Virus record (IMG/VR): IMGVR_UViG_3300048008_000449
Span: 140,773-204,772 of that record
Reading direction: 5' to 3' (one strand)
Length of the DNA: 64,000 bases
Below the pieces are notes generated by a model. The model was not told the origin of the DNA and made no database searches. It saw only the letters and a program-made list of their open reading frames with translations. Positions 15,231 to 39,358 of this stretch are shown here, in pieces (the stretch's first letter is position 1; every line of letters starts with the position of its first letter). Both the position numbers and the translations under genes were made by a program.

Positions 15231-15273
15231 AACTATACTTACAGTATACAGTAAGACTTCTTGCTTGTCAACC
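15231..15273 (-). promoter_or_regulatory. Sigma70-type promoter with spacer palindrome (AAA ATPase)
   Basis: TTGACA (15266-15271), 17 bp, TATACT (15243-15248); AAGAAGTCTT in the spacer. Confidence 0.85.
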
Positions 15274-15368
15274 TATATACGTCAACTTTTTTAATTTTTT
15301 TTTGGTTTGTTTATTCATAGAATTGGGCCCAATATAAAAAGGGCCCAATAATGTATATTTTGTGCTAA

Positions 15369-15629
15369 CTACGCCGCTACTCTTTTTTTAGCGATTGTGT
15401 ACTCTACTGCTGGTCTGCCTTGCATGCCAGATTCGATCGCTGTAGCTTTGATGTTAAAGCCTTCAGCTCTTAATTCTGAAAGTCTTGCACCTGGAGATGC
15501 GATGTCTAATTTATCTCTTAGAACATCCATAGTAAACGTTTTACCAGTTCCCCAAAATTTAGCTAGGATTTGTTGATTCTGTGTTCCTTCTTTAAAGAAC
15601 TTAGTTCCTACTGCTTTTGCTTTTCTCAT
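15369..15629 (-). CDS. Winged helix-turn-helix DNA-binding protein
   Basis: IASPGARLSELRAEGFNI HTH; has its own sigma70-type promoter. Confidence 0.75.
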   Translation of the reverse strand: MRKAKAVGTKFFKEGTQNQQILAKFWGTGKTFTMDVLRDKLDIASPGARLSELRAEGFNIKATAIESGMQGRPAVEYTIAKKRVAA

Positions 15630-15673
15630 AATATAACTCCTTTTTTTATTATTGTTATTAGTTATTATTAAGT

Positions 15674-15703
15674 ATAATATATATGAGTTTTGCTATTTGT
15701 CAA
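15674..15703 (-). promoter_or_regulatory. Probable sigma70-type promoter of the HTH gene
   Basis: GGTTGACA, then TATTAT at 18 bp or TATATT at 16 bp. Confidence 0.55.
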
Positions 15704-15717
15704 CCTTTAAAAAACCC

Positions 15718-16422
15718 TTATATTTCAAGGATTTTAACCCGGTTAACCATAGTTTCTTTAGCATTTGTGTACTTTGATAGCTCATGTTTGTTAACAGTAG
15801 CCCTAATTTTAATGTTTCTACCGTTTATAATGCTACTAATATCTGGCTGATCTCTCCACCAAAACTTAATTAAGTCTTTTTTAGCATATACAGTAGTAAT
15901 CATGTAAATATTGCTAGTTTGTATGAATTTAACATCCATTACTTCTACTGATAAATCGTAACGTTTACCTCTATCTCCAAAGTACTGGCTACTATGCTTT
16001 AGCGAAGATAACTTATCTTCAACTTCTTCACGTTTTTTGTCAATATTTACACTATGTGGTAAACTAGCTATAATACTAACAGTAAATTTGTTAACATTTG
16101 CTTCAGATAGAGATTTAACAACGTTAGCCTCAAAACTATTAAGGTTGTTAGTCATTTTCTTAATCATAAGTTTACCATTAATAACAGTAATCAAATCATT
16201 AGCTTTTGTAATTTGTTCTTCTGTAAAATTCATTTTAGGATTTTCAATAATATCAACAATACATGATTTATTATCTTCAATTATGACTGGATTTTCAGGA
16301 TCTGAGTGATCTGTATATCCTTGTCCACTTTTAATAAAACCCTGTGTTTCATGAACTTGTATAGCCGCGGCCATAACATCCACAACTGTAATACTTGGCC
16401 AAGGTGTTCTATTCTTAGACAT
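15718..16422 (-). CDS. Hypothetical early protein with a C-terminal OB-fold-like domain
   Basis: YFGDRGKR...IKIRATVNKH..ETMVNRVK. Confidence 0.55.
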   Translation of the reverse strand: MSKNRTPWPSITVVDVMAAAIQVHETQGFIKSGQGYTDHSDPENPVIIEDNKSCIVDIIENPKMNFTEEQITKANDLITVINGKLMIKKMTNNLNSFEANVVKSLSEANVNKFTVSIIASLPHSVNIDKKREEVEDKLSSLKHSSQYFGDRGKRYDLSVEVMDVKFIQTSNIYMITTVYAKKDLIKFWWRDQPDISSIINGRNIKIRATVNKHELSKYTNAKETMVNRVKILEI

Positions 16423-16444
16423 AATTGTTACTCCATTTAATTAA

Positions 16445-16484
16445 TATACTTACAGTATACGGCAAGAAGTCTTACTTGTCAACC
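16445..16484 (-). promoter_or_regulatory. Sigma70-type promoter with spacer palindrome
   Basis: TTGACA (16477-16482), 17 bp, TATACT (16454-16459); AAGACTTCTT. Confidence 0.85.
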
Positions 16485-16486
16485 TT

Positions 16487-16945
16487 TTAAAGTGAAATGT
16501 CTTCTAATCCTGCCGCTCTAAGTTTTACTACATTATTAATCTGAAACTGTTTAGCTTCTAATGCTTTAATCACGCCAATATACCTATTTCTAACCAAACT
16601 AAAGTCATTAATCAGATATTGTAAATCTACTACATTTTGTTCACCGTCAACATACTTGTCTGCATCACGTGAACTAAGTGCTTTATTGTAGTTTTCTAAA
16701 AACTTACGAAATGTTTGGGATCGTAATTTACGCATCTCAGTATTTAAAAACTCTAGTATAGCTTCAACTTCTTGTAATTGGTTAAATCTATGTTCTACAA
16801 TTCCTGGCATATCTCTACTTTGCTTTTCGAGGTTACCTTTCATACTGCATTCGAATCTTGCTTGATCAATTTCTTTTTCAAAGTGAGAGATAGCTGAAAC
16901 TATCTCTCCAAGATTTGCGGTTACTTTACGATACCATACACTCAT
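16487..16945 (-). CDS. uvsY: Recombination mediator UvsY
   Basis: LSSRDADKYVDGE, KALEAKQFQINNVVKLRAAG; next to uvsX. Confidence 0.85.
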   Translation of the reverse strand: MSVWYRKVTANLGEIVSAISHFEKEIDQARFECSMKGNLEKQSRDMPGIVEHRFNQLQEVEAILEFLNTEMRKLRSQTFRKFLENYNKALSSRDADKYVDGEQNVVDLQYLINDFSLVRNRYIGVIKALEAKQFQINNVVKLRAAGLEDISL

Positions 16946-17214
16946 TAGTAATCTTCATCCTCGTCGTCTTCATTATAGTCGCCGAAAATATCTTCATCTT
17001 CTTCTTCGAGCTCTAGATACTCATCAATTGCATCACTAAGGTATTCGCAATGATCAGCTATCTCTTTTACTGCTGGTTTAATATCAAATCCATGATCAAC
17101 TAGAGCCGCAATTACTTTACTTGCAAATTCAGGTTTATCTTTATCATTAATTAAAACAGTTGCTTCATCGTAAATATTAAAAACAAACTCAAAATCTCCA
17201 TCAGTTAGATTCAT
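16945..17214 (-). CDS. Acidic hypothetical protein
   Basis: 89 aa with a D/E-rich tail. Confidence 0.6.
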   Translation of the reverse strand: MNLTDGDFEFVFNIYDEATVLINDKDKPEFASKVIAALVDHGFDIKPAVKEIADHCEYLSDAIDEYLELEEEDEDIFGDYNEDDEDEDY

Positions 17215-18310
17215 TAACAGCCTCCGGTGTTGTTATAGTTTCATTATTAGCCATATCTTCTTCTGCCGCATCAGCAATTTCATTGTTGTATTCATTCATT
17301 ACAACATCCAATGCACCGTCTTTGTTTGCATTCCAAGGTTTACGGAACATTTTAATTACTTCGCCTGTTGTTGGGCTAGTGTATTCTAAACTGTTTCCAC
17401 TTTTCTTTAGCAAACCTTTTGCTTCAAAGAATTCAGTTAAGCCACTGTATGGACTCATACCTGTTTCATATGGGATTTCTACTTGCACACTTTCAAAGGG
17501 CTTAGAATATCTTGTTTTCATTACTTTACAAGCCGCTCTAATACCAAATACTTGTGATGTTTTATTACCATCTGCATCAACTTTTAATTTAAGTTTACGC
17601 ATTGCAATAACAATACTACTTGCATAGATAAAGCCTTGTCCACCTGAGATCTTATCATCTGGATCAAACATATCTTGCGATGCATATGTATGGTTAGTTG
17701 CTAGTAATCCTACATTATATTCACCAAACATGTTAACTGTGTTACGTACTAATGATGTTAGTGCTTTAGGCTTACGACCCATGTCACCTTTCATGTCACC
17801 TTTTTGAAACTGATCTACATCAGTAGGTGTTAGTAGCATACCCAATGAATCTACTACAAATAATACTTTAGGACGCTCATCTGGTTCTTTTTCAGCATAT
17901 TCTGCTTTGTAGTCTTTCATGAAATCACTAATAGTTCTAGCAACGTCATCAATCATTGACATGTTTAGTTTAAGTAGTTTTTCTGGTGTTGTGTCTACAT
18001 CTAATGCATGTAGCCAACTTTCATCTAGTGCATTTTCACTATCAATAAGGATAACAAAAATACCTTGATCTTGTGCCGCTTTAACTACGTTACCTGCGGC
18101 AATGTAACTTTTACCTGCACCGGACTCTCCGGCTAGTACTGTTACTTTACCTAGTGGAATTCCTTTATTGAAATCATCACTAATTAGTTTATTTAATGTG
18201 TAATTTCCTGTACTAATCCATGTATCAGGGTCGTTGAATCCAACACTTAAACCTGGTACACTTTTTGTAATACTTTTACGGAATTTACTTACGTCAAATG
18301 GTCTTGCCAT
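17201..18310 (-). CDS. uvsX: RecA/UvsX recombinase
   Basis: ISTGNYTLN, GESGAGKS, IDSENA, VVDSLG, SGGQG. Confidence 0.95.
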   Translation of the reverse strand: MARPFDVSKFRKSITKSVPGLSVGFNDPDTWISTGNYTLNKLISDDFNKGIPLGKVTVLAGESGAGKSYIAAGNVVKAAQDQGIFVILIDSENALDESWLHALDVDTTPEKLLKLNMSMIDDVARTISDFMKDYKAEYAEKEPDERPKVLFVVDSLGMLLTPTDVDQFQKGDMKGDMGRKPKALTSLVRNTVNMFGEYNVGLLATNHTYASQDMFDPDDKISGGQGFIYASSIVIAMRKLKLKVDADGNKTSQVFGIRAACKVMKTRYSKPFESVQVEIPYETGMSPYSGLTEFFEAKGLLKKSGNSLEYTSPTTGEVIKMFRKPWNANKDGALDVVMNEYNNEIADAAEEDMANNETITTPEAVNESN

Positions 18311-18333
18311 AATGTTTTTTCTCCTCTGTTATA

Positions 18334-18360
18334 AGTGAGGGCACTAAGGACACCCTCACT
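18334..18360 (-). other. Intercistronic hairpin between gp32 and uvsX
   Basis: AGTGAGGG-N11-CCCTCACT with a weak U tract. Confidence 0.6.
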
Positions 18361-18373
18361 CAATTTATATTAC

Positions 18374-19387
18374 TTATTGTTTACGGTTTCTAATTGCCGC
18401 TAAAATGTCCTGAGCACTCGGTGCATCACCTGCAGGTGCGCCGGCTGTTGCCATTTCTGGTTCCGCTGGTGCTTGTGCTACTGGTTCCGCTACTGTCTCA
18501 GTTACAACTGCCGCTTCAGCCACTGGTGCCGCTGGTGCTGGCGCCGGAGTTGGTGCAGGTGTAGGAGCAGGAGCTGGTGTTGCGCCTGTTGCTGGTGCAT
18601 CTACGCCATATGGACGATAGTATTGACCAAAACGTGCAGGATCATATAATTGACCATCAACACTTGCTTCAAACATTTCAAAGATTGCGTTCAATGCTTC
18701 TGCATCTGGTTTCTTAGGCAAGAAGTCATTTAGATTAAACAAGCCATGTGTTGCAATTGCATCACGCTCTGCTTGATCTAATCCACGTTCTCTACGAGCC
18801 CAATTTGATGTAGAATAATCTGCATACTGACCTTTTGTAGATTTTACAATCTTAAAGTCTGTACCAGCTTCATAATCAGTAGGAATCTCTTGAAACTCAG
18901 GATCCATAAGTGCTGAACTAATGATTTTATAAATTTGAGGTGAAATTACAAAACGTCTGATAGGATTCTCAGGTACTGAGTCTTCCTGCATTTCGCTTTG
19001 TGCTACAAATCCTTGAAAAATGTATGAACGTTTTTTCCAATACTTACGTCCCATATCTTCCATAGTAGGATCTTTAAACCAAGGACGAATTTCAGCATGT
19101 ACTGGGCATTGCTCTCCCCACATTTCCACACATGGAACTTGTACTGTTACTGGTTTGTTTTCGTCTTGACCTTTTACTCCTGGAAATTGAAGACGGATCA
19201 TTTGACGCTCTTTCCAAAAGAACGTATTGTTCTCGTCTGCGTCTGGTAAGAATCGTAATGTTGCTGATGTGCCTTCTGGAATATTCCAGTGTGCGAAGAT
19301 GGCGTTGTCGCCTCCTTGACTGCTAGAGCTTGAGCCCTTTGTTTCTTGTGCCTGCAGTTTTGCACGGATTTCTGCTAAAGATGCCAT
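18374..19387 (-). CDS. Single-stranded DNA-binding protein gp32-like
   Basis: LRFLPD, VPC..W..CPV, YWKKRSY, YADYSTS; Pro/Ala linker. Confidence 0.9.
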   Translation of the reverse strand: MASLAEIRAKLQAQETKGSSSSSQGGDNAIFAHWNIPEGTSATLRFLPDADENNTFFWKERQMIRLQFPGVKGQDENKPVTVQVPCVEMWGEQCPVHAEIRPWFKDPTMEDMGRKYWKKRSYIFQGFVAQSEMQEDSVPENPIRRFVISPQIYKIISSALMDPEFQEIPTDYEAGTDFKIVKSTKGQYADYSTSNWARRERGLDQAERDAIATHGLFNLNDFLPKKPDAEALNAIFEMFEASVDGQLYDPARFGQYYRPYGVDAPATGATPAPAPTPAPTPAPAPAAPVAEAAVVTETVAEPVAQAPAEPEMATAGAPAGDAPSAQDILAAIRNRKQ

Positions 19388-19498
19388 AATAATTTTCTCC
19401 TATATTAGCCTTTATTAGTAGTAGAACATAAGCTCTACTTTGTGTTAACAACTAACCTCTCGTTAGTTATTTTTGTTTTTGCCTTTGTTAGCCTTTAC

Positions 19499-19527
19499 AG
19501 TATACATTTTATAGTACTTACTGTCAA
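19499..19527 (-). promoter_or_regulatory. Sigma70-type promoter of the gp32-uvsX-uvsY operon
   Basis: TTGACA-17-TATACT. Confidence 0.8.
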
Positions 19528-19545
19528 GTACTTTTTACCGAAAAA

Positions 19546-20826
19546 TTATGAAATTTTTCTACGTAAATCATTTACAACTGATTCAGCAATATTTTCTACT
19601 GGTTCAGATTGTTTTGCTGGCATTTTATTGTTCTTATCTAAATAAGTTACAATTTTTGCCAATAACATAACAGTCTTTTGTGGCATGTTATGTAATTCTG
19701 TTCCTAAGTGACTTAGCAAGTTAAATGCTTCGTCGTTCTTGCTAGACATAGCAAGATAAGATAGCATGCTACTTAATTTTGCCATAGCTCCCATTCCACC
19801 TGAATATTTAATTGGATCTTCGTTATCTGGGTGTTCTGGATCGTTAGGGTCAATATTAAGTTTAAAATCTTCTTTATTTTTGATCATATCATACAGTCTG
19901 CTAAGATGTTCTTTTGTTAGATCTGTCATACTATCTCTCTCCTTCACAATACGTGCTACGGTTTCTAATACTGCTTCCATATTTGCAGTTTCGAATGTAT
20001 TGTACATGAATTTTTCAGTAATGTCAACCTCTTTATCTGAATTTTCTACAATCTTAGTAGAAGAACCCTGAAAGTTGTTATAACCTCTAGAGGTTTGAAG
20101 ACTGTGTACTGTTTGTTTTAATTCTTTTAATTTTAATTTAACGGTTTCAACAATATCAATGTTTCCTTCGTTAACTAATTTATTCGTACGTACATGACGT
20201 ACAAATTGATTGCATTCTGCTACTTCTTTGCAGATACCTAAAATGGACTCACCTATTGTGTCATAAGGATTCCCGCCCATACTTACATGTTTAGCCATTG
20301 CCTTAGCACCAGCTAAATATTTGTGTGGAAAGCTAAATCTTTCACCTGCAGAGTTCTCAATAAAGAGTGCTTTGATATTACGTGATCTGCTTCCACGTAC
20401 TTCTTCATTAACACCTTTTGAATGTTTAATGATGAGTCTAGTTGACTCTGGTAATTGTATATAACTTGTTTTTAAACTTCCTGTTGCACGTGAATAGCCT
20501 TCTTTAACTGTTTCACTTGCGAAGTCTTTTGGTGCTATATTTTTATCAAATTTTCTTATTGTATATTCTGCCATAGCGTTATGTCCTGCTTTCTTAATAC
20601 TATCTAAAAGATCTTTGTGCTTATCAAAACTAAAATCTGCTCCTGCTTGTACAACAACTTCCACGTCATCATTTTCTGTTCTTATAGTGACTAGAAAATC
20701 TTGATCGTAAGCGTAAAATCTCGCTGACTGATCTGCGTCTAAAGTTTTGTTACCTTCAAAATCAAACAAACGTAACTTAATATTTGCTCCTTTGATAATG
20801 TTAAAAATTTCTGTTGATAATTGCAT
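19546..20826 (-). CDS. Hypothetical, probable head protein
   Basis: Many VxE/IxE sites; late box at 20848-20854. Confidence 0.55.
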   Translation of the reverse strand: MQLSTEIFNIIKGANIKLRLFDFEGNKTLDADQSARFYAYDQDFLVTIRTENDDVEVVVQAGADFSFDKHKDLLDSIKKAGHNAMAEYTIRKFDKNIAPKDFASETVKEGYSRATGSLKTSYIQLPESTRLIIKHSKGVNEEVRGSRSRNIKALFIENSAGERFSFPHKYLAGAKAMAKHVSMGGNPYDTIGESILGICKEVAECNQFVRHVRTNKLVNEGNIDIVETVKLKLKELKQTVHSLQTSRGYNNFQGSSTKIVENSDKEVDITEKFMYNTFETANMEAVLETVARIVKERDSMTDLTKEHLSRLYDMIKNKEDFKLNIDPNDPEHPDNEDPIKYSGGMGAMAKLSSMLSYLAMSSKNDEAFNLLSHLGTELHNMPQKTVMLLAKIVTYLDKNNKMPAKQSEPVENIAESVVNDLRRKIS

Positions 20827-20864
20827 CTTTATAGTATTCCTTTAATGTATTTATCAAATAAGTG

Positions 20865-22421: not shown

Positions 22422-22426
22422 AATAT

Positions 22427-22433
22427 TATTTAT
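22427..22433 (-). promoter_or_regulatory. T4-late-like box ATAAATA (terminase), representative of about 20 copies
   Basis: Same box at 742, 2730, 5609, 14294, 20848, 24704, 27260, 28379, 30930, 34667, 36727, 40637, 50505, 51951, 54789 and 59784, each just upstream of a gene start. Confidence 0.8.
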
Positions 22434-22452
22434 CTACGTAGTTAACAAAGAA

Positions 22453-22479
22453 AAACAGCGTAGACTAGCTACGCTGTTT
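22453..22479 (-). terminator. Intrinsic terminator
   Basis: AAACAGCGTAG/CTACGCTGTTT inverted repeat plus U tract. Confidence 0.8.
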
Positions 22480-22497
22480 AAAGGGGATGTTATATTA

Positions 22498-24189: not shown

Positions 24190-24679
24190 TGCCTTTTTCC
24201 TTTTCTTTTTTGAGTTTCGCTAACTCTTTAATAAATTTGTTGTTATATGCATCTCCAAAATGATCTTCAGCTTTGATTCCTGCTTTTTCATCTTTGCTGT
24301 ATTCTGGCTCTGCTAATACACTCTTAACTTCACCACCTTGTGGCGGTATTGCTTCATCTGGCTCATGTTCGCCTTTTACTTTAAGTACGCCATCAGCTAG
24401 ACCAATCATATTACGGATGTCATTTTGTATTTGCCATCCACTTGCAATAATGTTAGTTTCAAATTCGTATGTAAATACTTCGTACCCTCTAGCTTTAGGA
24501 AAATCACGTGGTGTACTTTGTAACATTGTTTTCTTCGCAGCACCGAGTCCTTTAGAGTCGTATTTTCCGAGGTGCTTCTCTATACGATCTTGTTGATCGT
24601 TGTTAAGTTCATGAATAGTTTTAATTTTAAACTTCCATGTTTTTTTAGCTTCCGTTAAGTATTCTGTGTACGATTTCAT
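24182..24679 (-). CDS. Hypothetical head protein
   Basis: MKSYTEYLTEA, a T4 capsid-targeting-like N-terminus; late box at 24704-24710. Confidence 0.6.
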   Translation of the reverse strand: MKSYTEYLTEAKKTWKFKIKTIHELNNDQQDRIEKHLGKYDSKGLGAAKKTMLQSTPRDFPKARGYEVFTYEFETNIIASGWQIQNDIRNMIGLADGVLKVKGEHEPDEAIPPQGGEVKSVLAEPEYSKDEKAGIKAEDHFGDAYNNKFIKELAKLKKEKEKGNE

Positions 24680-24702
24680 TGCTGTGTATTCTCCTATTAA
24701 TA

Positions 24703-25248: not shown

Positions 25249-25289
25249 ATTAAGTTTCCAATTATACTAGTACTTATCCTTTTAAAATT

Positions 25290-27634: not shown

Positions 27635-27645
27635 AATAGTTCTCC

Positions 27646-28460: not shown

Positions 28461-30878
28461 TTACGAAAGATCGCCAGTGTTTACAATTCTAATTGGAATG
28501 TAAATAAATTCTGCTGATTTTGTAGGCTCAATTGCTACGTCAACATAAAATTCATTTGCATCAATTCTTGCTGGTGTGTTATTTGTTGTATCACACACAA
28601 CTGCAAAATCGTAAATACCACGCTGTTGTAAAATGTTAGCTAGGAAACCATCAAATACTGCTTTAGCATTTGCACGTGTTCCTGCATCATTTGGTTCAAA
28701 TAAGAACGGTCTTGAAATAACTGCAAAACGCTCTCTTAGATAAGCTGTAAGTCTAGCTACGTTCACTCTGTCTAATGCTGAAGCAGTTGTATGAAGTGAT
28801 TTTTGACCAAATACAACAACGCCCTCTGCCGGGAATCTTGCAATTGGGTTCAATTTGTTATCATACATTGCATCTCTAGAACCTTGTGTTAGTGCTACTT
28901 TAACGAACTCGTCTTCGCTGTTTAAGTAACCAACGTTTGATGCGTTTTGTACAACACCACGTGTTAAACCTGCTGGTGCAAACCATTGGAATGACACATT
29001 ATCACTGTATGCATATGTGTATAATGCAATGTGTGATGCTGGTGCAACAACGCTATCGCCTGTTACTGGATTTGTAGTTAATGCGTGTGGGTAGTAAACT
29101 GCTGAATAAGTATTCTTAGTTACTAGTCCTTTTTCACCATTTTCAGTTGCCGCTGTTCCTTGAATCCAAGAAACTGCTTCTGTTGCATTTAAACGGAATG
29201 GAGCATCAACAATAACAAATGCTGTTTCGTCTTTGTCGCTGTTTAGTGTTACCATTTCGTCGTATAGTTCTGGATATGCTGGAGCTGCAATTAAACGGAA
29301 TTGAACTGTGTCTTCACGTAGTTCTGGTTTAGCTGCTGATGCTTGCATAGCTGTTGTGACAACTTTACGCTGAGCTAATCTACCAAATGAACCACTGCCA
29401 TCGGCTGCATTGCTTGCTTTGTTACGCCATTTCCAAGGTGTTGCTAGTGAACTATCATATTCTCTAACTGTGCTTGAAGATCTACACATGTTAATACCAG
29501 TTATTCCAACTGGATGTATTAGTGGATCTGGAGCACCTGCTAATAGAGTTGCTTCAAAGGCACCTGCTGCTGTAGCGTTGGCAGTAATGTCGCCAAATAC
29601 TATACCTGCACTTGTGCTTTGATCTGTACCATCTTTTAATATCCATGCTGTACCGTTATGTCTGTAAATTACAGGATAACCGTCTGCATCTGTATCTACC
29701 CAGTAATCACCATCTGATAGTGATCCACCGGATCCGTCTGTAGTTGGAGCAATAGTTACATACTGTACATCAGAAACTTTTTGCCATTTCTGTGTTCCAC
29801 TATCGCTTACTACTTCGTAAATTGCTAAGTCGTTAACATCTGGATCAAACCAAAGTGTACCATCTACTGGAGCACCTGTTGGTTGAGTTACTGATGCGTT
29901 CATTACAAATCCGCCTGTTGCTGTAGTTGGGTCTGTTGAGATGTCATCCCAATCATTACCAATACTGTCATAACGTTTAATTGAAATGTCTGAAGTAGCA
30001 GTGTCTAGCCAAATGTCGCCATCTGTTAATGTACGTGATGTTGCTGATGAACCATCTGCAAACGTATCACTTGTAGCACCAGTTGGTGCTGAAGCTTGTG
30101 CGTATGTTGCTTTTTCAGAAACAAATGCGTCAGCTACTGTTGTAAATAATTTAAGATCTACATTTAATCCGCTACCCGGTGTTGTTGTTTTAATCCATAC
30201 ATCACCTACTGATGGGCCTGCTGGCGCTGAGTAGTGTGGTGCGAATGTTGGTGTAACTGCTACCCATGCTGGGTTAGAGTCACCTACATAGTATTCAATT
30301 TTTGTGTCTGTTGTAGAATTTGCAACTGCTACAAGGTATTCACCTTGAGTTGCTGATGTGCTTGGAGCACTTCCATCTGTAAGTTCTACTGTTGGAGTTT
30401 TTTCTACCCAGCCTGCTGCTGAATATTCGAATATACCCCAACTTGAAGTTGAAGGGCTTACCCAATATGTATTATTTGCAGGATTACCTGTTGGTTCTGC
30501 TGAAAGTGGTCTCAATGCTGTTAAGTCTACATCAGAACGTACAATGTACGCCGCTGAACTTTGACCTAAAAATGAGTATGCTGCCAATAAACCGTATTCG
30601 TTAGTTTCATCACCTTGTGATACTGTGCCACTTACCTTACGGAAGTCGACATTACCAAAATATTGAGTTAATTCTCTTTGTGATGTAACTAGAACAGGTT
30701 GGTTTGAATTTGCAGACTTTGTAAATTTTGCAATACCATCGGTTTCAGTTAGGGTTGGATCAACCTTGTCCTGACCAGTGGCAATGAAAATCATTGGTAC
30801 AGTACCGGCACCGGCTGGACCGTAAACTGATTCGTCTGTTACTGTTACCTGGACGCCAGGTGAAACAAGATTTGCCAT
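28461..30878 (-). CDS. Contractile tail sheath gp18
   Basis: LVSPGVQV, WFAPAGLTRG, LNPI, FGQKS, DRVNVARL, FEPND, IEPTKSAEFIYIP. Confidence 0.97.
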   Translation of the reverse strand: MANLVSPGVQVTVTDESVYGPAGAGTVPMIFIATGQDKVDPTLTETDGIAKFTKSANSNQPVLVTSQRELTQYFGNVDFRKVSGTVSQGDETNEYGLLAAYSFLGQSSAAYIVRSDVDLTALRPLSAEPTGNPANNTYWVSPSTSSWGIFEYSAAGWVEKTPTVELTDGSAPSTSATQGEYLVAVANSTTDTKIEYYVGDSNPAWVAVTPTFAPHYSAPAGPSVGDVWIKTTTPGSGLNVDLKLFTTVADAFVSEKATYAQASAPTGATSDTFADGSSATSRTLTDGDIWLDTATSDISIKRYDSIGNDWDDISTDPTTATGGFVMNASVTQPTGAPVDGTLWFDPDVNDLAIYEVVSDSGTQKWQKVSDVQYVTIAPTTDGSGGSLSDGDYWVDTDADGYPVIYRHNGTAWILKDGTDQSTSAGIVFGDITANATAAGAFEATLLAGAPDPLIHPVGITGINMCRSSSTVREYDSSLATPWKWRNKASNAADGSGSFGRLAQRKVVTTAMQASAAKPELREDTVQFRLIAAPAYPELYDEMVTLNSDKDETAFVIVDAPFRLNATEAVSWIQGTAATENGEKGLVTKNTYSAVYYPHALTTNPVTGDSVVAPASHIALYTYAYSDNVSFQWFAPAGLTRGVVQNASNVGYLNSEDEFVKVALTQGSRDAMYDNKLNPIARFPAEGVVVFGQKSLHTTASALDRVNVARLTAYLRERFAVISRPFLFEPNDAGTRANAKAVFDGFLANILQQRGIYDFAVVCDTTNNTPARIDANEFYVDVAIEPTKSAEFIYIPIRIVNTGDLS

Positions 30879-30972
30879 ATTATAGCTCCTTTTCTATTTT
30901 AGAATATTATCTAAATTGTTATCTACATGTATTTATTTAGATTTTGGAAAAACAGCGGTTTATAGAGTTAAC

Positions 30973-34641: not shown

Positions 34642-34669
34642 ATATATTTCCTTTATAGTATATGTTTAT

Positions 34670-35302
34670 TTATTCTATAATTTTTTGCAGAGTTTGAGAC
34701 TTAAAATTTTCTAATGTAGATGTGTTAGTTAAGTTAATATCAAAATTCCAACCTGCCCAACTCCATTCGCTTTTATGTACATCAGGAAAAACAACAGACA
34801 TACTGTTATGTTCAACATTATTTGCACCTGCTTGATTAATACTAGAAGCAGTAGCCCACCATAATGGTTTCTCATTTCTCCAAACAACTGCTGTTGTTCC
34901 ACCTAATTTTTTAATTGCTTTAAGTTCATTAAAAAATCTACAGTCACTAATAACAACATTTTTTGTACACATCTCAATTTGACGTTCACATGCCGCAACC
35001 CAGATATCTGGATGGAAATGTGTTCTCAAAACATCAGTGCCTACGTGTTGTAATGCAAATCTTGGAGTAAAATTAGGAATATCTAAACGCTCAGCCCACC
35101 ACTCATCAACAGTTTCTCTCCATACTCTACTTTCTGATGTATTTCCTTCTAGTAGGATTCTGTCCCAACCAAATATATTTGCACATGCATCTTTTAATAC
35201 TCCTGCAAAACTAATACGTTGAAAGCCTTCTTCGATGAGAAAACCTGCGGCGGTGTCTTTTCCGTGACCAATAAGGCCACATATACCAATTACTTTTTTC
35301 AT
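34670..35302 (-). CDS. Deoxynucleoside monophosphate kinase (gp1-like)
   Basis: GLIGHGKDT, SFAGVLKD, TPRFALQHVGTD, SDCRFFNE. Confidence 0.92.
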   Translation of the reverse strand: MKKVIGICGLIGHGKDTAAGFLIEEGFQRISFAGVLKDACANIFGWDRILLEGNTSESRVWRETVDEWWAERLDIPNFTPRFALQHVGTDVLRTHFHPDIWVAACERQIEMCTKNVVISDCRFFNELKAIKKLGGTTAVVWRNEKPLWWATASSINQAGANNVEHNSMSVVFPDVHKSEWSWAGWNFDINLTNTSTLENFKSQTLQKIIE

Positions 35303-35308
35303 AAATTT

Positions 35309-35337
35309 ATTATAGTGGGTTTTTAATTATTTGTCAA
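35309..35337 (-). promoter_or_regulatory. Sigma70-type promoter of a leaderless dNMP kinase
   Basis: TTGACA-17-TATAAT-6 nt-ATG. Confidence 0.8.
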
Positions 35338-35962
35338 TAACAAAGTTATTGTTTCTAAGTTTTTCAACTACGTCTTCAAACTTCTCACCTAATACTTTAA
35401 TTCTTAGGTAAATTCTTTCTCTTTTAATAGTAGGTACACCGTGTACAGTCATTCCATTAAATAATGTAGGGTGCTTATTGCTATAGTAGTGATTATATTC
35501 AATATCTAAATCATTCCATCCATATTTCTTTTCATAGTTAACATTTCTTTCTGGGGTAACTCCAACTCTACTATAAAAACTAATTGGTTCGCCTGCATCT
35601 TCTGGCATAATAGGAAACATTATTCCACACCACATGTAATGATCAGTATGAGGGTGAAAGCTATAACCTGGATCGTAATGTAATAAATCAATGTCACGTG
35701 GAGCAATAGGTTGTTTGAAGTTAAACATATTAACGTATTTTTCTATTACTGGATAATCAAGTAAGTTTTTGCCTTCAGTTTTTTGTACTGCAATAGCGTT
35801 CATACCTGTTCTGCCTTTGAACTCTCTCTTTTCTGGAGAAAGGTATTGCATATAATCTCCAAATTGCATTATATTATGTTTATGTTGATTTACAAAATCT
35901 AATAGTTCTAACCTATCGTATGTTACTTCGTCGATAGTACAGTGGTGATTACCAAGTTGCAT
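35327..35962 (-). CDS. Cupin/2OG-Fe(II) oxygenase-like
   Basis: PGYSFHPHTD...FNGMTVHGV...RIYLR. Confidence 0.65.
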   Translation of the reverse strand: MQLGNHHCTIDEVTYDRLELLDFVNQHKHNIMQFGDYMQYLSPEKREFKGRTGMNAIAVQKTEGKNLLDYPVIEKYVNMFNFKQPIAPRDIDLLHYDPGYSFHPHTDHYMWCGIMFPIMPEDAGEPISFYSRVGVTPERNVNYEKKYGWNDLDIEYNHYYSNKHPTLFNGMTVHGVPTIKRERIYLRIKVLGEKFEDVVEKLRNNNFVIDK

Positions 35963-35965
35963 TTT

Positions 35966-36703
35966 TTACCCTATTACAAAGCCAAGTCCTGTACTTCCAT
36001 CGTTGTATAATGTTAGTTCAGTTTCTAATTTATCAATTTCTGCTTGTGCGTCTGCTCTAAGTTGATCTGCGTTCATTGTAGTACCACCTTGTGGTCCTGC
36101 AATCTGTGTAAATTTACCACGTGCTTCTGATAAGATCATTTTAGCATGAGCAAATGCATAATCTTTTAACCAAGGTCCTGCATATGTATCTTCTAATAAA
36201 CTTTCTGTTGGTCTATAATTGTAGCAATGCAATACTGCATTGTCATTTGCTTTAATTTTACGCTGTAAAATTAATTTTTTATCTTGAGGTCTCCAAGTAA
36301 ACATTATTTCAGCACCAAATAGTCTACCCATTGTTTCTCTATTCTGTTGTAAGAAATCAAATGATGCTAATCCACCATTTCTACTACTTCCTAATAGGTA
36401 CGTATTAATGTAAGCGGCTTGGAATGGTTCTATATCGTTACCTGTTCCACTACTTACACCAGTTGTTCTACGATAAATGTCACGAACTTCCATTACTTCT
36501 TCAGGTAAAGTATATTCACTTTGATCCTTTATCATATCTAATATAATAAAGCTCTCCTCAACTGCGTTTTCTGCACGTTGTCTATACTTTGATAAAGATT
36601 TGTCTATTGCTAGCTCATAATGTTCCGGATCTAGCTCAACATCAATCATTCCACCACCTAGGCGAAGTTCTATTTCTTTTTGAAGTTTGTTTGATGCACT
36701 CAT
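35966..36703 (-). CDS. Neck protein gp13-like
   Basis: RLGGGMIDVELD, WLKDY, RGKF..IAGPQGGTTMN. Confidence 0.9.
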   Translation of the reverse strand: MSASNKLQKEIELRLGGGMIDVELDPEHYELAIDKSLSKYRQRAENAVEESFIILDMIKDQSEYTLPEEVMEVRDIYRRTTGVSSGTGNDIEPFQAAYINTYLLGSSRNGGLASFDFLQQNRETMGRLFGAEIMFTWRPQDKKLILQRKIKANDNAVLHCYNYRPTESLLEDTYAGPWLKDYAFAHAKMILSEARGKFTQIAGPQGGTTMNADQLRADAQAEIDKLETELTLYNDGSTGLGFVIG

Positions 36704-36741
36704 TTACGTTATTCTCCTGCTGTATGTATTTATCATAACAA

Positions 36742-37461
36742 CTAGAAATTTATTGTACGTTTACCAATCCTGACAGGGTTATTTAAACACTCTTCTAGAT
36801 ATTTTCTAGCTACATTTTGCCATATTGGGTACTGCTCGTCTTTAATATCATCAATAAACAGTAATTGTTCAAAATTTGTATCTTTATATAATGAACAATA
36901 ATGTTTAATATATGTAGTGTCTACTAGTTTAAGTTCGTCTTTAAATGAACTTGTATTAATTATGCCAGGTGTGTGATCGGTATATGTTAATCCATTCCAA
37001 GCATCATTGACATTTTGAAAACGAGTATATGGCTGATCAGCATCTGGATAATTATAGTCTATGTATATAATTTCATTTACTGCTTGGCGTTGTGCCCATC
37101 TTGCAAACAGTCTGCTTTTACCAGGATGAACATTAACTCTACCAGGAATCCAATATGCAACTGGCTTGTAAATTATATCTTGATCTGCCATATGCAAATT
37201 CTGTACTACATATCTGCATTGCTGTCCTGTCTGCATATGGAAAAAATTTTTACTATTGTTAATATAGTATTCGTAATGTTCATCTATTTCTTTCCAATTT
37301 TTTCTTACAAACCTTACCCAAGGTGCAAGAGTAGAGTATAATATTTCTGGAATACTTAGACTATAATTTCTAATATTAGATGCGTCGAAATAACCTATGT
37401 TTCCGCCGCATTCTATATGATTGTCATACCATTTTACAAAGTCATTATATGCATTATCCAT
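36742..37461 (-). CDS. Hypothetical protein
   Basis: 239 aa; VHPGKSRL is weakly ParB/Srx-like. Confidence 0.55.
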   Translation of the reverse strand: MDNAYNDFVKWYDNHIECGGNIGYFDASNIRNYSLSIPEILYSTLAPWVRFVRKNWKEIDEHYEYYINNSKNFFHMQTGQQCRYVVQNLHMADQDIIYKPVAYWIPGRVNVHPGKSRLFARWAQRQAVNEIIYIDYNYPDADQPYTRFQNVNDAWNGLTYTDHTPGIINTSSFKDELKLVDTTYIKHYCSLYKDTNFEQLLFIDDIKDEQYPIWQNVARKYLEECLNNPVRIGKRTINF

Positions 37462-37465
37462 GCAA

Positions 37466-38758
37466 TTATTTATTAAATGTTGCTAGTAGTATAACTTCGC
37501 CGTTTACTCGACCGTTTAGTTTAGTTTCTGTTGTCTTTAATGTTTCGAACAACTTTTCTGTTTTAGATCTTGTAGCTTTTTTAACTTCTGGTAAGAATTC
37601 AGCAGGTTTACGAACAGTACGTTGTACACTTTTGTCTTCATCGTAACCTATTATAGTAGTTCCTTTAACACTTAGTCCACTACCTTCACGTTTTAATCCC
37701 ATAGGATCTACATTCTTAGCATAATACATTCCTATCTTACGGTTCTTAGTGTTAAAAACCACCAGTATTCGGGCGTAAACAATATCTGCTGGTGTTATGC
37801 TACCTAAACCATAATCAGTGTCTGTTTGCTTAAATTTGAGCTTCTTAACAATATCTTCTGGACTCTTTGTACGAGTCTTACGTGGCTTACGATTTGCTTT
37901 ACTTTCTGCTTCAACAATATCACATGCATCTACTATTTTACGATATACTTCTAATAGTGCTTTTTTCTGTTGAGCATTAAGGTGATTATATCCTTCTTCT
38001 AATTGTTCACGCCAGTCATCAATTTTATCTTTAGGAATTTTAGTATTAAGTTCTGTGTATTCTTCTAATCCGTGAATATACCCTTTACGTATAATACGTG
38101 CATGAGCTTGCTTAACACCTGCTCTACGAAACATCTCAACTGGAGCAAAGTCTTTTACAAATTTTAAATCATAACCTGAGTTAACCCAGTCGTCTAAAAA
38201 TTGTTCAACTTCATCAGTCATTTGCATTGCGGCTTTATGAAGCAAATCTTGTATTGTAGGTTTATATACATTCGCTGTTCGTTTAGCTTCTGCTTCTGCT
38301 AATTTTTCAGCTTCTTCTACAAACGTTGAACCTTCTTCAATTGCATTAGTAATACGTGATTTAATATATGTAGAAATTGGCTGAGGTGTACCGCCTGTAC
38401 CAGGAAGACTTTCCCAATATGCATTCCATGCTAGGTGTATATCAGGACAACCCATTGTAAGCATACGACAGTAATATCCTGTTACTGCACTAAGTGATTG
38501 GCTTTTTGCTGCCTTTACACATTTAATATCTTTTTTTGTATAATCATTTGCAAGCATCCAATCATATGCATACTCAACTAAATCGCTTGCTTTATAATTA
38601 CGATAATAATATTCAGTTGCATGTTGTCTTTTAACATGATATTCTTTACCAGACCAACCGTCTGCACCCTCCCATGAAGGATCTTGTAATGAACCTTTAC
38701 GGATTCGTTGTGAAGGTGCTCTTGCTTTTTTCTTTTTAGTAGCTTTGGGTAATGCCAT
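37466..38758 (-). CDS. Hypothetical early protein
   Basis: 430 aa with basic ends; GGAG RBS; downstream of a sigma70-type promoter. Confidence 0.65.
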   Translation of the reverse strand: MALPKATKKKKARAPSQRIRKGSLQDPSWEGADGWSGKEYHVKRQHATEYYYRNYKASDLVEYAYDWMLANDYTKKDIKCVKAAKSQSLSAVTGYYCRMLTMGCPDIHLAWNAYWESLPGTGGTPQPISTYIKSRITNAIEEGSTFVEEAEKLAEAEAKRTANVYKPTIQDLLHKAAMQMTDEVEQFLDDWVNSGYDLKFVKDFAPVEMFRRAGVKQAHARIIRKGYIHGLEEYTELNTKIPKDKIDDWREQLEEGYNHLNAQQKKALLEVYRKIVDACDIVEAESKANRKPRKTRTKSPEDIVKKLKFKQTDTDYGLGSITPADIVYARILVVFNTKNRKIGMYYAKNVDPMGLKREGSGLSVKGTTIIGYDEDKSVQRTVRKPAEFLPEVKKATRSKTEKLFETLKTTETKLNGRVNGEVILLATFNK

Positions 38759-38761
38759 TGC

Positions 38762-38899
38762 TTATACTCCGTGATAATCTTCGAACATATGACGATCTAG
38801 TTCGTCTGCTTTATTTTGATACTTATCAATTAAAGACAAAACTTCGTCGGTTTGAGGTAATTTTTTTAATTCTTCGATGAATTCTAACAACTCCATCAT
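38762..38899 (-). CDS. 45-aa small protein MMELLEFIEELKKLPQTDEVLSLIDKYQNKADELDRHMFEDYHGV
   Basis: Translated by hand; AGGAG RBS; promoter at 38927-38955. Confidence 0.7.
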   Translation of the reverse strand: MMELLEFIEELKKLPQTDEVLSLIDKYQNKADELDRHMFEDYHGV

Positions 38900-38926
38900 A
38901 GTATGATTACTCCTGTGAATGTTCTA

Positions 38927-38955
38927 AGTATACGGCTTCTAGTTTATAGTGTCAA
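38927..38955 (-). promoter_or_regulatory. Sigma70-type promoter
   Basis: TTGACA-17-TATACT. Confidence 0.8.
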
Positions 38956-39298
38956 CCGGTTTGAATCCAAAATTAGCAACTACATGTTGAGAACCCGATG
39001 AATCTTCAACAATATCTCCAACACTAACACTATACATACGAGATAAACGTTCTATATTTTCTTCAGGACCCATGTTACCTGTGTGAAACACGCCTTCTAA
39101 TCCATCAGCGGTAATGTTACTAACATGTGTATAGTAGCCTCGGTTAAAAGCATCAGCGGCAACTGTACCAATTTCATTTTTACTAAAGTTCATGTCTAGC
39201 TTTAATGATTGTTTATGAACAGCATCGTGTCCTTCAGCATTAACTAGATCTATTTCGGCATCTGTTAAATGAATTTGGTATAATTTATATGTTTGCAT
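38939..39298 (-). CDS. YodL-like early protein
   Basis: YKLYQI...LEGVFHTGN...SVSVGDIV. Confidence 0.55.
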   Translation of the reverse strand: MQTYKLYQIHLTDAEIDLVNAEGHDAVHKQSLKLDMNFSKNEIGTVAADAFNRGYYTHVSNITADGLEGVFHTGNMGPEENIERLSRMYSVSVGDIVEDSSGSQHVVANFGFKPVDTIN

Positions 39299-39315
39299 TT
39301 CTGACTCCTTTAATT

Positions 39316-39358
39316 AACTATACATACAGTATACGATAAGACGTCTTGGTTGTCAACC
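39316..39358 (-). promoter_or_regulatory. Sigma70-type promoter with spacer palindrome
   Basis: TTGACA (39351-39356), 17 bp, TATACT (39328-39333); AAGACGTCTT. Confidence 0.85.

What the first reader, a model, noticed from the sequence alone, without database searches (positions are those of the whole stretch)
15231..39358. Family of about 40-bp early promoters with an AAGA-NN-TCTT palindrome in the spacer
Seen: three promoters (15231-15273, 16445-16484, 39316-39358) share GGTTGACAA-NN-AAGAnnTCTT-nnnGTATACTGTAwGTATA. The palindrome is at the same offset each time and only its two central bases vary. Other TTGACA-17-TATACT promoters (19499, 38927) lack it. A wHTH gene (15369-15629) lies between two of the copies. 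Inference: the operator of a phage regulator, defining a regulon of AAA ATPase, OB-fold protein and YodL-like protein.
Basis: partly seen in the sequence, partly recalled or inferred. Interest (0 to 1): 0.6.

Follow-up and report, generated by a model that had tools for sequence, protein, structure and literature searches.

The report
Shared palindromic operator inside jumbo-phage promoters
An uncultured marine jumbo phage and its relatives carry the same 10-base palindrome between the -35 and -10 boxes of many of their strongest promoters, which most likely lets one still-unidentified DNA-binding protein switch a whole set of pre-late genes off together.

Summary
It sits on the minus strand and reaches well beyond the window.

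- **The sites.** All three are consensus sigma-70-type promoters: GGTTGACA, a 17-bp spacer, then TATACT. The spacer holds AAGA-NN-TCTT.
- **The genome.** The window is the end of a 204,772-bp fragment, about 56% complete, of an uncultured seawater jumbo myovirus distantly like Rak2 and PA5oct.
- **Enrichment.** The record has 19 exact cores against about 4.5 expected. Thirteen of them, plus one with a mismatch, lie in promoter spacers.
- **Spread.** More than 115 IMG/VR stretches carry the motif.
- **Conservation.** In relatives the arms stay fixed, the two central bases vary freely, and flanking sequence drifts.
- **Register.** Orthologous genes keep the core at different offsets from the -35 box (3, 5 or 8). 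Promoter duplication cannot explain this.

I read the palindrome as an operator for a dimeric protein that occludes RNA polymerase at a regulon of at least 14 pre-late promoters.

It keeps its recognition helix in relatives that have no such palindrome, and it is missing from its slot in many relatives that have one. The binder is unidentified.

The promoter cassettes also behave like PeSL shuffling modules. This is a new variant of a known kind, of moderate interest.

The parts
15231..15273 (-). Palindromic promoter 1, in front of the 288-aa AAA ATPase gene. -35 TTGACA at 15266-15271, core AAGAAGTCTT at 15253-15262, -10 TATACT at 15243-15248, then the conserved leader GTAAGTATAGTTAAT.
   Evidence: The orthologous promoter keeps the core in 28 distinct relatives. 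In G008 the core sits at offset 8.
16445..16484 (-). Palindromic promoter 2, in front of the 234-aa protein of unknown function. -35 at 16477-16482, core AAGACTTCTT at 16464-16473, -10 at 16454-16459. It abuts the stop codon of the UvsY-like gene at 16487.
   Evidence: Conservation was measured across 35 distinct relatives.
39316..39358 (-). Palindromic promoter 3, in front of the 119-aa protein. -35 at 39351-39356, core AAGACGTCTT (a perfect 10-mer) at 39338-39347, -10 at 39328-39333.
   Evidence: The orthologous promoter is palindromic in G001 and G008.
14343..15209 (-). AAA ATPase gene (288 aa), first gene behind promoter 1.
   Evidence: Pfam AAA/AAA_16 and PHROG 1250. 47% identical to a PA5oct protein.
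15718..16422 (-). 234-aa gene behind promoter 2.
38939..39298 (-). 119-aa gene behind promoter 3, possibly YodL-like. In some relatives this cassette sits between the 234-aa gene and the AAA gene.
15369..15629 (-).
   Evidence: Pfam E 2.9e-7. AlphaFold model pLDDT 78 with helix-strand-helix-helix-wing topology. Weak ArsR/MarR/Fur-like fold matches. Covered as a discrete piece in four metatranscriptome assemblies.
15674..15703 (-). The winged-helix gene's own sigma-70-type promoter (TTGACA-16-TATATT or 18-TATTAT), without the palindrome. It serves as the internal control whose spacer is not conserved.
15325..15350 (-). GC-rich hairpin (TTGGGCCC...GGGCCCAA) after the winged-helix gene and about 54 bp upstream of promoter 1. 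RNA contigs end 10-30 nt beyond it.
   Evidence: Read; contig ends at 15295-15316.
39371..39396 (-). Terminator-like hairpin (AACCCA, 10-nt loop, TGGGTT, then a T run) 19 bp upstream of the -35 of promoter 3. Together they form a PeSL-like terminator-plus-promoter composite.
   Evidence: Read. The loop is too long for the scan.
19499..19527 (-). Perfect TTGACA-17-TATACT promoter in front of the gp32-like gene, without the core. It keeps a left-arm remnant (GTAAGTACT).
38927..38955 (-). Perfect TTGACA-17-TATACT promoter without any palindrome.

Best explanation
**What it is.** The 10-bp dyad [C/T]AAGA-NN-TCTT[A/G] is an operator. It extends to 16 bp, AGTAAGAC/GTCTTACT, in the best copies. It is embedded between the -35 and -10 boxes of consensus host-type (sigma-70) promoters in an uncultured marine jumbo-phage clade.

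**How it most likely works.** A sequence-specific protein binds it as a symmetric dimer and blocks RNA polymerase. One factor can then shut down, or hold down, a dispersed regulon of at least 14 pre-late promoters. These drive replication, recombination and repair genes, tRNAs and small accessory genes. Late genes use a separate ATAAATA-type promoter.

**What is shown.**
- The motif exists and is enriched.
- It lies strictly inside promoters.
- Its arms are conserved while its centre is free.
- It persists at orthologous genes at changing registers.

**What is inferred.**
- A protein binds it.
- The effect is repression. This is inferred because the promoters are already near-consensus with an optimal 17-bp spacer, and because a 5-bp register shift puts the site on the opposite face of the helix. 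Steric occlusion tolerates that; face-specific activation would not.
- The binder is phage-encoded.

**The binder is unidentified.** The compact core equals one MetJ-type met-box (AGAYRTCT), so a ribbon-helix-helix protein is one possibility. The neighbouring 86-aa winged-helix protein is an unlikely candidate, at about 0.2.
For: **Enrichment and placement**
- 19 exact cores against 4.45 expected. 13 of 19 lie directly after GTTGAC. 14 of 20 GTTGAC-type promoters carry it.

**Spread**
- More than 115 IMG/VR stretches match the full promoter pattern.
- Five other large records have 4-7 promoter-linked cores each, against 0-1 for the reversed control pattern. A second set gave 6 and 3 in two of five records.

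**Conservation**
- Over 60 distinct spacers, positions 4-7 and 10-13 (AAGA and TCTT) are nearly invariant and positions 8-9 are free. The Y/R flanks vary independently (Fisher p = 0.056).
- In orthologous promoters the arms carry 1.3-1.7 bits and the centre 0.4-0.6 bits. The control promoter's spacer carries 0.4-0.8 bits.

**Register turnover at orthologous genes**

| Gene | Offsets from -35 |
|---|---|
| AAA ATPase | 3 (G000, G001), 8 (G008) |
| 220-aa gene | 5 (G000), 3 (G002, G004) |
| 97-aa gene | 5 (G000, G004), 8 (G008) |
| DUF7717 gene | 3 (G000), 8 (G008) |

**Other support**
- A symmetric double change, AAAACGTTTT, occurs in a 69%-identity relative.
- Relatives at about 48% protein identity have 31 sigma-70-like promoters and no core. 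The element is therefore clade-specific, not a general promoter feature.
- The separate late-type motif precedes 37 genes, none of which also has a palindromic promoter.
- The RNA hairpin is not stable (z from -1.4 to +0.7).
Against: - No binding protein was identified. The only Pfam-recognisable sequence-specific DNA binder in the 204 kb does not co-vary with the operator.
- No HTH_3, RHH_1, Arc, MetJ or sigma-70 r2 family was found in the record. About 146 ORFs scanned gave no other transcription-factor domain.
- About 44% of the genome is missing.
- No expression timing, start-site or binding data exist.
- Many instances are related by descent or by cassette copying, so counts are not independent.
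- Most loci were found through the motif itself.
Confidence: 0.6

Rival explanations
1. PeSL-like mobile promoter cassettes only. The roughly 45-bp block (A-rich upstream region, GGTTGACA, spacer, TATACT, leader, Shine-Dalgarno) stays similar because copies spread and homogenise by recombination, as in T4-type phages. On this reading the palindrome has no binding function of its own.
For: - The cassettes are compact: 40-47 nt from the core to the start codon.
- Hairpins lie upstream of two of the three window copies.
- The slot between the 234-aa gene and the AAA gene holds the winged-helix gene in some relatives and the 119-aa gene in others.
- The leader GTATAGTTA is also shared.
- PeSLs are documented in T4-type phages (PMC2839356, PMC4122927).
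Against: - Homogenisation would keep the centre and flanks as well as the arms. Here the centre is free and the sequence beyond -10 drifts.
- The core appears with other -10 boxes (TATAAT, TACAAT, TATTAT) and at offsets 3, 5 and 8, even at orthologous genes.
- PeSL stem-loops lie upstream of the promoter, not in the spacer.
- This rival is compatible with the operator reading as a second property. It fails only as the sole explanation.
Confidence: 0.15
2. An intrinsic promoter element. The spacer sequence tunes RNA polymerase binding or DNA shape, as with the extra consensus regions of T4 early promoters, and no separate factor is involved.
For: - T4 early promoters show additional regions of consensus beyond the hexamers (PMC2988021).
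- The element is found only inside promoters.
Against: - RNA polymerase contacts are asymmetric and depend on register. This element is a dyad with a free centre, and it moves by 2-5 bp relative to both hexamers.
- 19 of 32 loosely defined sigma-70-like promoters in the same genome lack it, as do all 31 in related operator-less phages.
Confidence: 0.1
3. A host transcription factor's operator. The phage places a host regulator's site in its promoters to couple its programme to host physiology, for example through a MetJ-like or other host dimer.
For: - The core A-AGA-Y-R-TCT-T equals one met-box. The MetJ consensus is AGACGTCT, with position 4 being C or T (PMC3228920, PMC3413123).
- No phage binder was found.
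Against: - Functional MetJ repression needs two or more adjacent boxes. The neighbouring 8-mers here match 0-3 of 8.
- The phage carries an alphaproteobacterial-type tmRNA (123 bits), and MetJ has been described in gammaproteobacteria.
- A scan of 185,579 prokaryote genomes with the -35-plus-dyad pattern gave one hit, which is the chance expectation. That pattern would miss host operators lacking the TTGACA context.
Confidence: 0.1
4. An RNA-level hairpin in read-through transcripts, acting as a processing or stability signal.
For: - Promoters occur in tandem arrays, with four in 3 kb at genome 119.9-122.9 kb, so upstream transcripts cross them.
- The AAGA/TTTT variant would keep a G-U pair.
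Against: - The stem is at most 6-7 bp, and the folds are no better than shuffles (z from -1.4 to +0.7). The hairpin is absent from most minimum-energy structures.
- The flanks do not covary.
- An RNA element has no reason to sit always between -35 and -10.
Confidence: 0.03

Closest known systems
PeSL (promoter-early stem-loop) cassettes of T4-type phages (Arbiol et al. 2010, PMC2839356; Comeau et al. 2014, PMC4122927)
   Same: - Repeated, highly similar sigma-70-type promoter cassettes with a Shine-Dalgarno sequence and start codon.
- Often preceded by a hairpin.
- Placed at gene cassettes that are swapped between close relatives. Here the winged-helix gene and the 119-aa gene alternate in one slot.
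   Different: - The PeSL stem-loop lies upstream of the promoter and is read as a terminator.
- No dyad inside the spacer is described for PeSLs.
- Here the conserved unit is a 10-bp core that changes register within the promoter.
Operators inside strong promoters: P22 Arc at Pant, IncP plasmid KorA/KorB global regulons, Aca repressors at anti-CRISPR promoters (from my own knowledge, not checked in papers here)
   Same: - A short dyad overlaps the polymerase-binding region of near-consensus promoters.
- In the plasmid case one repressor controls many dispersed promoters.
   Different: - Those binders are known and the regulation has been shown.
- Here no binder is known.
- The setting is an apparently lytic T4/Rak2-like jumbo phage with at least 14 sites.
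- The site's register within the spacer is variable.
T4 early promoters and their shut-off (Hinton 2010, PMC2988021)
   Same: Very strong host-type promoters with UP-like, -35 and -10 elements and extra conserved positions. They are used before the late ATAAATA-type class.
   Different: - T4's extra consensus is not a dyad.
- T4 switches classes through Alt/Mod, AsiA/MotA and gp55/gp33. The review notes that early shut-off still occurs without AsiA.
- No MotA-box class or sigma-70 r2 gene was found in this fragment.
RpoD-like promoters of Rak2-like jumbo phages CBB and GAP32, and of PA5oct (PMC5259590, PMC7318152)
   Same: - These are the nearest cultured relatives by tail sheath, UvsX and AAA ATPase (38-66% identity).
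- They have the same two promoter types, TTGACA-type and ATAAATA.
   Different: No spacer palindrome is reported for them. Their DNA-metabolism genes use a TGAAACG-type -35, which I did not find enriched here.
MetJ met-box (AGACGTCT)
   Same: The core of the phage dyad is one met-box, including the Y-R preference at the two central positions.
   Different: - It is a single box, not a tandem array.
- No MetJ was found in the phage fragment.
- The host is probably alphaproteobacterial.

Membership tests
Sigma-70-type bacterial promoter | -35 TTGACA and -10 TATAAT-like hexamers 16-18 bp apart, upstream of a gene | tested here: met
   All three sites score 11 of 12 with a 17-bp spacer. A Shine-Dalgarno sequence and start codon follow 40-47 nt after the core.
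Sigma-70-type bacterial promoter | Transcription starts 6-8 nt after the -10 box | not testable with these tools
   Only assembled metatranscriptome contigs were available. One contig end at 15670 coincides with the start predicted for the non-palindromic winged-helix promoter. Nothing informative was found for the palindromic promoters.
Repressor operator within a promoter | Dyad symmetry overlapping the polymerase-binding region | tested here: met
   The core AAGA-NN-TCTT is centred at about -21.5, -19.5 or -16.5. The best copy is a perfect 16-bp dyad.
Repressor operator within a promoter | Half-sites under selection beyond the surrounding promoter sequence | tested here: met
   Arms 1.3-1.7 bits, centre 0.4-0.6 bits, control spacer 0.4-0.8 bits. 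Register changes occur at orthologous genes.
Repressor operator within a promoter | A cognate DNA-binding protein that binds the site and lowers transcription | not testable with these tools
PeSL mobile regulatory cassette | Early-type promoter plus Shine-Dalgarno and start codon as a repeated compact unit | tested here: met
PeSL mobile regulatory cassette | Stem-loop just upstream of the promoter | tested here: inconclusive
   Hairpins lie 19 bp upstream of site 3 and 54 bp upstream of site 1. Site 2 has none, because it abuts the stop codon of the upstream gene.
PeSL mobile regulatory cassette | Association with cassette gain, loss or exchange between close relatives | tested here: met
   The slot between the 234-aa gene and the AAA gene holds the winged-helix gene, the 119-aa gene or other genes in different relatives.
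PeSL mobile regulatory cassette | Mini-circle formation by recombination between cassettes | not testable with these tools
   This needs inverse PCR on infected cells (PMC2839356).
MetJ operator | 8-bp met-box AGACGTCT-like palindrome | tested here: met
   The core is A-AGA-[C>T,A]-[G,A>T]-TCT-T. The met-box matrix is in PMC3228920.
MetJ operator | Two or more adjacent met-boxes | tested here: not met
   The neighbouring 8-mers GACAAGTA and TACTGTAT match 0 and 3 of 8 positions (read).
MetJ operator | MetJ present in phage or host | tested here: inconclusive
   PF01340 is absent from the 204-kb fragment. The host is unknown, but the phage tmRNA is of the alphaproteobacterial type.
MerR-type spacer operator | Dyad in an over-long 19-20-bp spacer, activated by DNA distortion | tested here: not met
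   Spacers are 17 bp, with one of 18. The family's definition is from my own knowledge.
NtcA/CRP-family site (GTA-N8-TAC) | Outer GTA and TAC triplets conserved, inner 8 bp free | tested here: not met
   The pattern is the opposite. The inner AAGA/TCTT is invariant, the outer positions vary (position 3 is T in 39 and C in 29 of 69), and the triplets are absent from the offset-5 and offset-8 classes. The consensus is from my own knowledge.
HTH_39 winged-helix protein as the operator's binder | Winged-helix DNA-binding fold | tested here: met
   PF14090 at E 2.9e-7, above the cut-off. AlphaFold pLDDT 78. Fold matches to ArsR, MarR and Fur regulators with probability 0.97-0.99 but E 0.06-0.3.
HTH_39 winged-helix protein as the operator's binder | Co-occurrence of protein and operator across relatives | tested here: not met
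   - Present with the same recognition helix in the operator-less records G009-G011.
- Absent from the syntenic slot in many operator-bearing relatives, and from the 112-kb G001.
- All of these records are fragments.
HTH_39 winged-helix protein as the operator's binder | Forms a symmetric dimer | tested here: inconclusive
   The homodimer prediction gave no verdict.

The most novel reading that the evidence does not exclude
A widespread clade of uncultured marine jumbo phages, probably of alphaproteobacteria, times its pre-late genes with a dedicated phage-encoded dimeric repressor. The repressor may be a small ribbon-helix-helix protein that recognises a single met-box-like dyad. Its operator is written into the spacer of otherwise consensus host promoters across the genome. 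This would be a repressor-based temporal switch in a T4/Rak2-like lytic phage, where class switching is thought to work through modification of RNA polymerase and sigma appropriation. It would also offer a concrete handle on how early promoters are shut off.
Probability: 0.35. Interest if true: 0.7.

Novelty: new variant of a known kind. Interest (0 to 1): 0.55.

Why it matters
- **A gap in T4 biology.** T4-like and jumbo lytic phages are usually described as switching gene classes by altering the host polymerase. The shut-off of T4 early promoters is still not fully explained (PMC2988021). The many transcription factors that jumbo phages encode have been called a neglected topic (PMC7824862).
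- **What this finding offers.** A conserved operator inside at least 14 strong promoters, present in over a hundred marine viral contigs, is a defined and testable cis-element. It can be used to fish out the regulator and to map a phage regulon in an uncultured, environmentally common group.
- **Practical uses.** The promoter-plus-operator cassette is a compact candidate for a switchable strong promoter. The register turnover at orthologous genes is a clean natural experiment on operator placement.

Tried and rejected
**Searches that found nothing**
- Near-identity search of 6 kb against cultured phages found no match.
- The winged-helix protein has no relative in cultured phages and none in PDB sequences.
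- HTH_3, RHH_1, Sigma70_r2, MetJ and Arc are all absent from the 204 kb.
- HTH_39 is absent from five other fragments.
- Pfam tallies of 96 further small ORFs showed metabolic and translation genes only, with no transcription-factor domain.
- A literature word search for the palindrome found only primers and shRNAs.

**Tests without a verdict**
- Homodimer prediction of the winged-helix protein gave no verdict, so it counts neither for nor against.
- Metatranscriptome contigs cannot show starts or strands. They gave nothing for the palindromic promoters.
- Phyletic profiling for a binder lacked power. The ORFs shared by the operator-bearing fragments merely mark the region those fragments overlap. 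G002 and G004 do not cover the region that holds the winged-helix gene.

**Candidates and readings rejected**
- An 85-aa DsbA/GapR-like protein (genome 56808-57065, E 1.5e-4, below the Pfam cut-off). It is present in G002, G003, G004 and G008. T4 DsbA and GapR bind AT-rich or overtwisted DNA with low specificity (PMC2988020, PMC7824862), so it is a poor fit to a GC-containing dyad.
- The single GTDB hit is a chance match: no -10 box and no shared genes.
- RNA hairpin.
- NtcA, MerR and host-MetJ readings (see the membership tests).

- Read laying was given 3,801 letters, under the 6,000 limit.
- No other genetic code was used.

Full report
**1. What is there**

Each reads GG-TTGACA-(AGC/AGT/ACC)-AAGA-NN-TCTT-(ACTG/GCCG/ATCG)-TATACT-GTA(A/T)GTATA. 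This is a perfect -35 box, a 17-bp spacer and a -10 box one base from consensus, with a Shine-Dalgarno sequence and start codon 40-47 nt after the core.

The pattern TTGACAANNAAGANNTCTT has 3 exact matches in the window. Shuffles give 0.42 even with two mismatches allowed.

**2. Context**

- The window is the last 64 kb of a 204,772-bp virus record with 34% G+C. CheckV rates it 56% complete, so the genome is about 360 kb.
- It is an uncultured seawater phage. Fourteen DNA runs hold at least half of the sampled words of the region, and six metatranscriptomes hold smaller shares of it.
- Its tail sheath (38%), UvsX (66%) and AAA ATPase (47%) are nearest to PA5oct, Atu_ph07, GAP32 and CBB, the Rak2-like branch of T4-like jumbo myoviruses.
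- It carries nine tRNAs and an alphaproteobacterial-type permuted tmRNA. This points to an alphaproteobacterial host.

**3. The family is genome-wide and clade-wide**

The record holds 19 exact AAGA-NN-TCTT against 4.45 +/- 1.8 expected. Thirteen follow a GTTGAC -35 box directly. A fourteenth, with one mismatch, precedes a tRNA cluster. In all, 14 of 20 GTTGAC-type promoters have it.

The core sits at three registers:
- **Offset 3** from the -35 box: nine copies, including the three in the window. The best, at genome 121961, is the perfect 16-mer AGTAAGACGTCTTACT.
- **Offset 5**: three copies, with TATAAT or TACAAT -10 boxes.
- **Offset 8**: overlapping the -10 box.

The genes behind these promoters include:
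- the AAA ATPase, followed by a helicase;
- a 234-aa unknown protein;
- a 119-aa, possibly YodL-like protein;
- an LPD29 protein;
- a DNA-ligase operon;
- a DUF7717 protein plus an HD protein;
- tRNAs;
- several membrane proteins and proteins of unknown function.

IMG/VR holds more than 115 stretches with the full promoter pattern. Other large related records have 3-7 promoter-linked cores each, while a reversed control pattern gives 0-1.

**4. Is the palindrome more than a copied promoter?**

(a) *Conservation profile.* I fetched 80 loci through the AAA ATPase protein, so the sample is unbiased for the motif.

| Orthologous promoter set | Arms (bits per position) | Centre | Other |
|---|---|---|---|
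| AAA | 1.41 / 1.69 | 0.64 | 21 nt after -10: about 1.1 |
| 234-aa gene | 1.30 / 1.29 | 0.44 | |
| Winged-helix gene's own promoter (control, same genomes) | 0.41 / 0.84 | 0.39 | |

(b) *Sequence variation.* Over 60 distinct spacers, AAGA and TCTT are nearly invariant and the centre is free, with a Y-R preference. The flanking Y and R vary independently. This is what separate half-site recognition predicts. Hairpin covariation would look different.

(c) *Register turnover.* Orthologous genes keep the core at different offsets.

| Gene | Offsets from the -35 box |
|---|---|
| AAA ATPase | 3 in G000 and G001, 8 in G008 |
| 220-aa gene | 5 in G000, 3 in G002 and G004 |
| 97-aa gene | 5 in G000 and G004, 8 in G008 |
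| DUF7717 gene | 3 in G000, 8 in G008 |

(d) *Clade specificity.* More distant relatives (G009-G011, about 48% protein identity) have 31 sigma-70-like promoters and no core.

A 69%-identity relative also shows the symmetric double change AAAACGTTTT. Simple duplication or homogenisation does not explain these results. Selection for the dyad within the promoter does.

**5. Mechanism**

The promoters are near-consensus with the optimal spacer, so they need no activator. A dyad centred between -22 and -16 lies under RNA polymerase. A shift of 5 bp puts the site on the other face of the helix, which steric repression tolerates and face-specific activation does not. I therefore infer a dimeric repressor that shuts off, or holds down, the whole set.

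A second promoter class, (G)ATAAATA(C), lies 25-36 nt before 37 genes, including the tail sheath. It never coincides with a palindromic promoter. It matches the late motif of CBB, GAP32 and T4. The palindromic set is thus a pre-late class. The label 'early' is plausible but untimed.

RNA folding gives no stable hairpin.

**6. Who binds?**

- It is a true HTH_39 winged helix.
- Its own promoter is non-palindromic in all 32 distinct relatives.
- In four metatranscriptome assemblies it forms a discrete contig reaching from about its predicted start (15633-15670) to just past its hairpin (15295-15316), at higher depth than its neighbours.

Its distribution does not follow the operator:
- The same slot holds the 119-aa gene or other genes in many operator-bearing relatives.
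- The 112-kb G001, which covers that region, has no HTH_39 gene.
- The operator-less G009-G011 keep it at 59-72% identity with the same DIASPGAR(L/I)SE(L/I)R helix.
- All of these records are fragments, so this is moderate evidence against, not proof.

Other searches for a binder:
- No other transcription-factor domain appeared among about 146 scanned ORFs or in five family scans of the whole record.
- The only exception is a weak DsbA/GapR-like hit, which I consider a poor fit.
- 44% of the genome is missing.

The core equals one MetJ met-box, AGAYRTCT. Its compactness suits a ribbon-helix-helix dimer in one major groove. There is no tandem box, no MetJ in the fragment, and the host is probably alphaproteobacterial. 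I take this as a hint about the fold of a phage protein, not as a case for host MetJ.

A scan of 185,579 prokaryote genomes with the -35-plus-dyad pattern found only one chance hit.

**7. Relation to known systems**

The cassettes share features with PeSLs: a repeated strong promoter with Shine-Dalgarno and start codon, hairpins upstream of two of the three, and gene swapping at the slot. PeSLs have their stem-loop upstream and no spacer dyad. Shuffling and operator function can coexist.

Papers on the nearest cultured phages report plain RpoD-like promoters. No paper in the library holds the palindrome as a regulatory word. The logic matches operators inside strong promoters, such as Arc at Pant, the KorA/KorB regulons and Aca repressors. 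Those comparisons are from my own knowledge.

**8. Verdict**

- The 'operator' reading is supported by comparative evidence but not by any binding data.
- The proposed regulator is not supported.
- The finding is a new variant of a known kind, of moderate interest.

Noticed in passing
L006:9633-9979 (-) (genome about 104.6-105.0 kb); tRNAs at L006:5978-6226 and 8824-8900, and L007:14779-14932 and 16769-17311: The phage carries an alphaproteobacterial-type permuted tmRNA (Rfam alpha_tmRNA, 123 bits; tag ANDNYSPEMALAA) and nine tRNAs. This is a clue that the host is a marine alphaproteobacterium.
   Followed up: partly
Whole record. In the window, for example 30879-30940 upstream of the tail sheath gene (28461-30878) and upstream of 19546-20826: A second promoter-like motif, (G)ATAAATA(C), occurs 25-36 nt before 37 genes. 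It is enriched about 10-fold in upstream regions. It resembles the T4 and Rak2-like late promoter and never coincides with a palindromic promoter.
   Followed up: partly
Window 15231-15243, 16445-16454 and 39316-39328; also L282-L286: A conserved start of the leader, GTATAGTTA(A/G), follows the -10 box in both offset-3 and offset-8 promoters, even in the 63-67%-identity relative G008. A weaker form occurs in non-palindromic promoters. Its role is unknown; it may be an initial transcribed sequence or a 5' UTR signal.
   Followed up: no
Window 15295-15670: The 86-aa winged-helix gene appears as one discrete contig in four marine metatranscriptome assemblies, with depth up to 80 against about 2 for its neighbours. 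The contig reaches from about its predicted start to just past its hairpin. This suggests an abundant monocistronic mRNA in the sea.
   Followed up: partly
Window 15369-15629 compared with L144, L156 and L167-L172 at positions about 2577-2925: The slot between the 234-aa gene and the AAA ATPase gene holds the winged-helix gene in some relatives and the 119-aa gene in others. In this genome the 119-aa gene lies 23 kb away (38939-39298). This is cassette shuffling at the conserved promoters.
   Followed up: partly
L003:18808-19065 (-) (genome 56808-57065): An 85-aa protein has a weak match to T4 DsbA (Phage_DsbA, E 1.5e-4, below the cut-off). It sits behind a non-palindromic sigma-70-type promoter. 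It is conserved at 74-86% in G002, G004 and G008, above the 67% median for shared proteins.
   Followed up: partly
Genome 19-115 kb (L002-L006) and window 39412-41652: The phage carries many host-like accessory genes:
- translation initiation factor IF3 and ribosomal protein S21;
- ClpS and HSP20;
- NifU and other Fe-S assembly proteins, and ferredoxin;
- a cold-shock domain protein;
- PRPP synthetase and RpiB;
- peroxiredoxin and MazG;
- tryptophan halogenase;
- an SbmA/BacA-like transporter.
   Followed up: no
L280:4775-4796 (MAG contig JBCCNG010000025.1): The only match of the -35-plus-dyad pattern in 185,579 prokaryote genomes lies in a cyanobacterial MAG contig. It has no -10 box at the right distance and no genes shared with the phage, so I take it as chance.
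   Followed up: yes
G008:C1:3827-3836 (L314), reverse strand: In the 221-kb relative, one promoter has the core directly overlapping the last base of TTGACA (TTGACAAGACGTCTT-N8-TATATT). This would be a fourth register.
   Followed up: no
G009-G011 (L287-L296): The operator-less relatives hold 12 exact AAGA-NN-TCTT in 168 kb, none in promoters. A crude expectation is 4-5. I did not check whether codon usage explains the excess.
   Followed up: no
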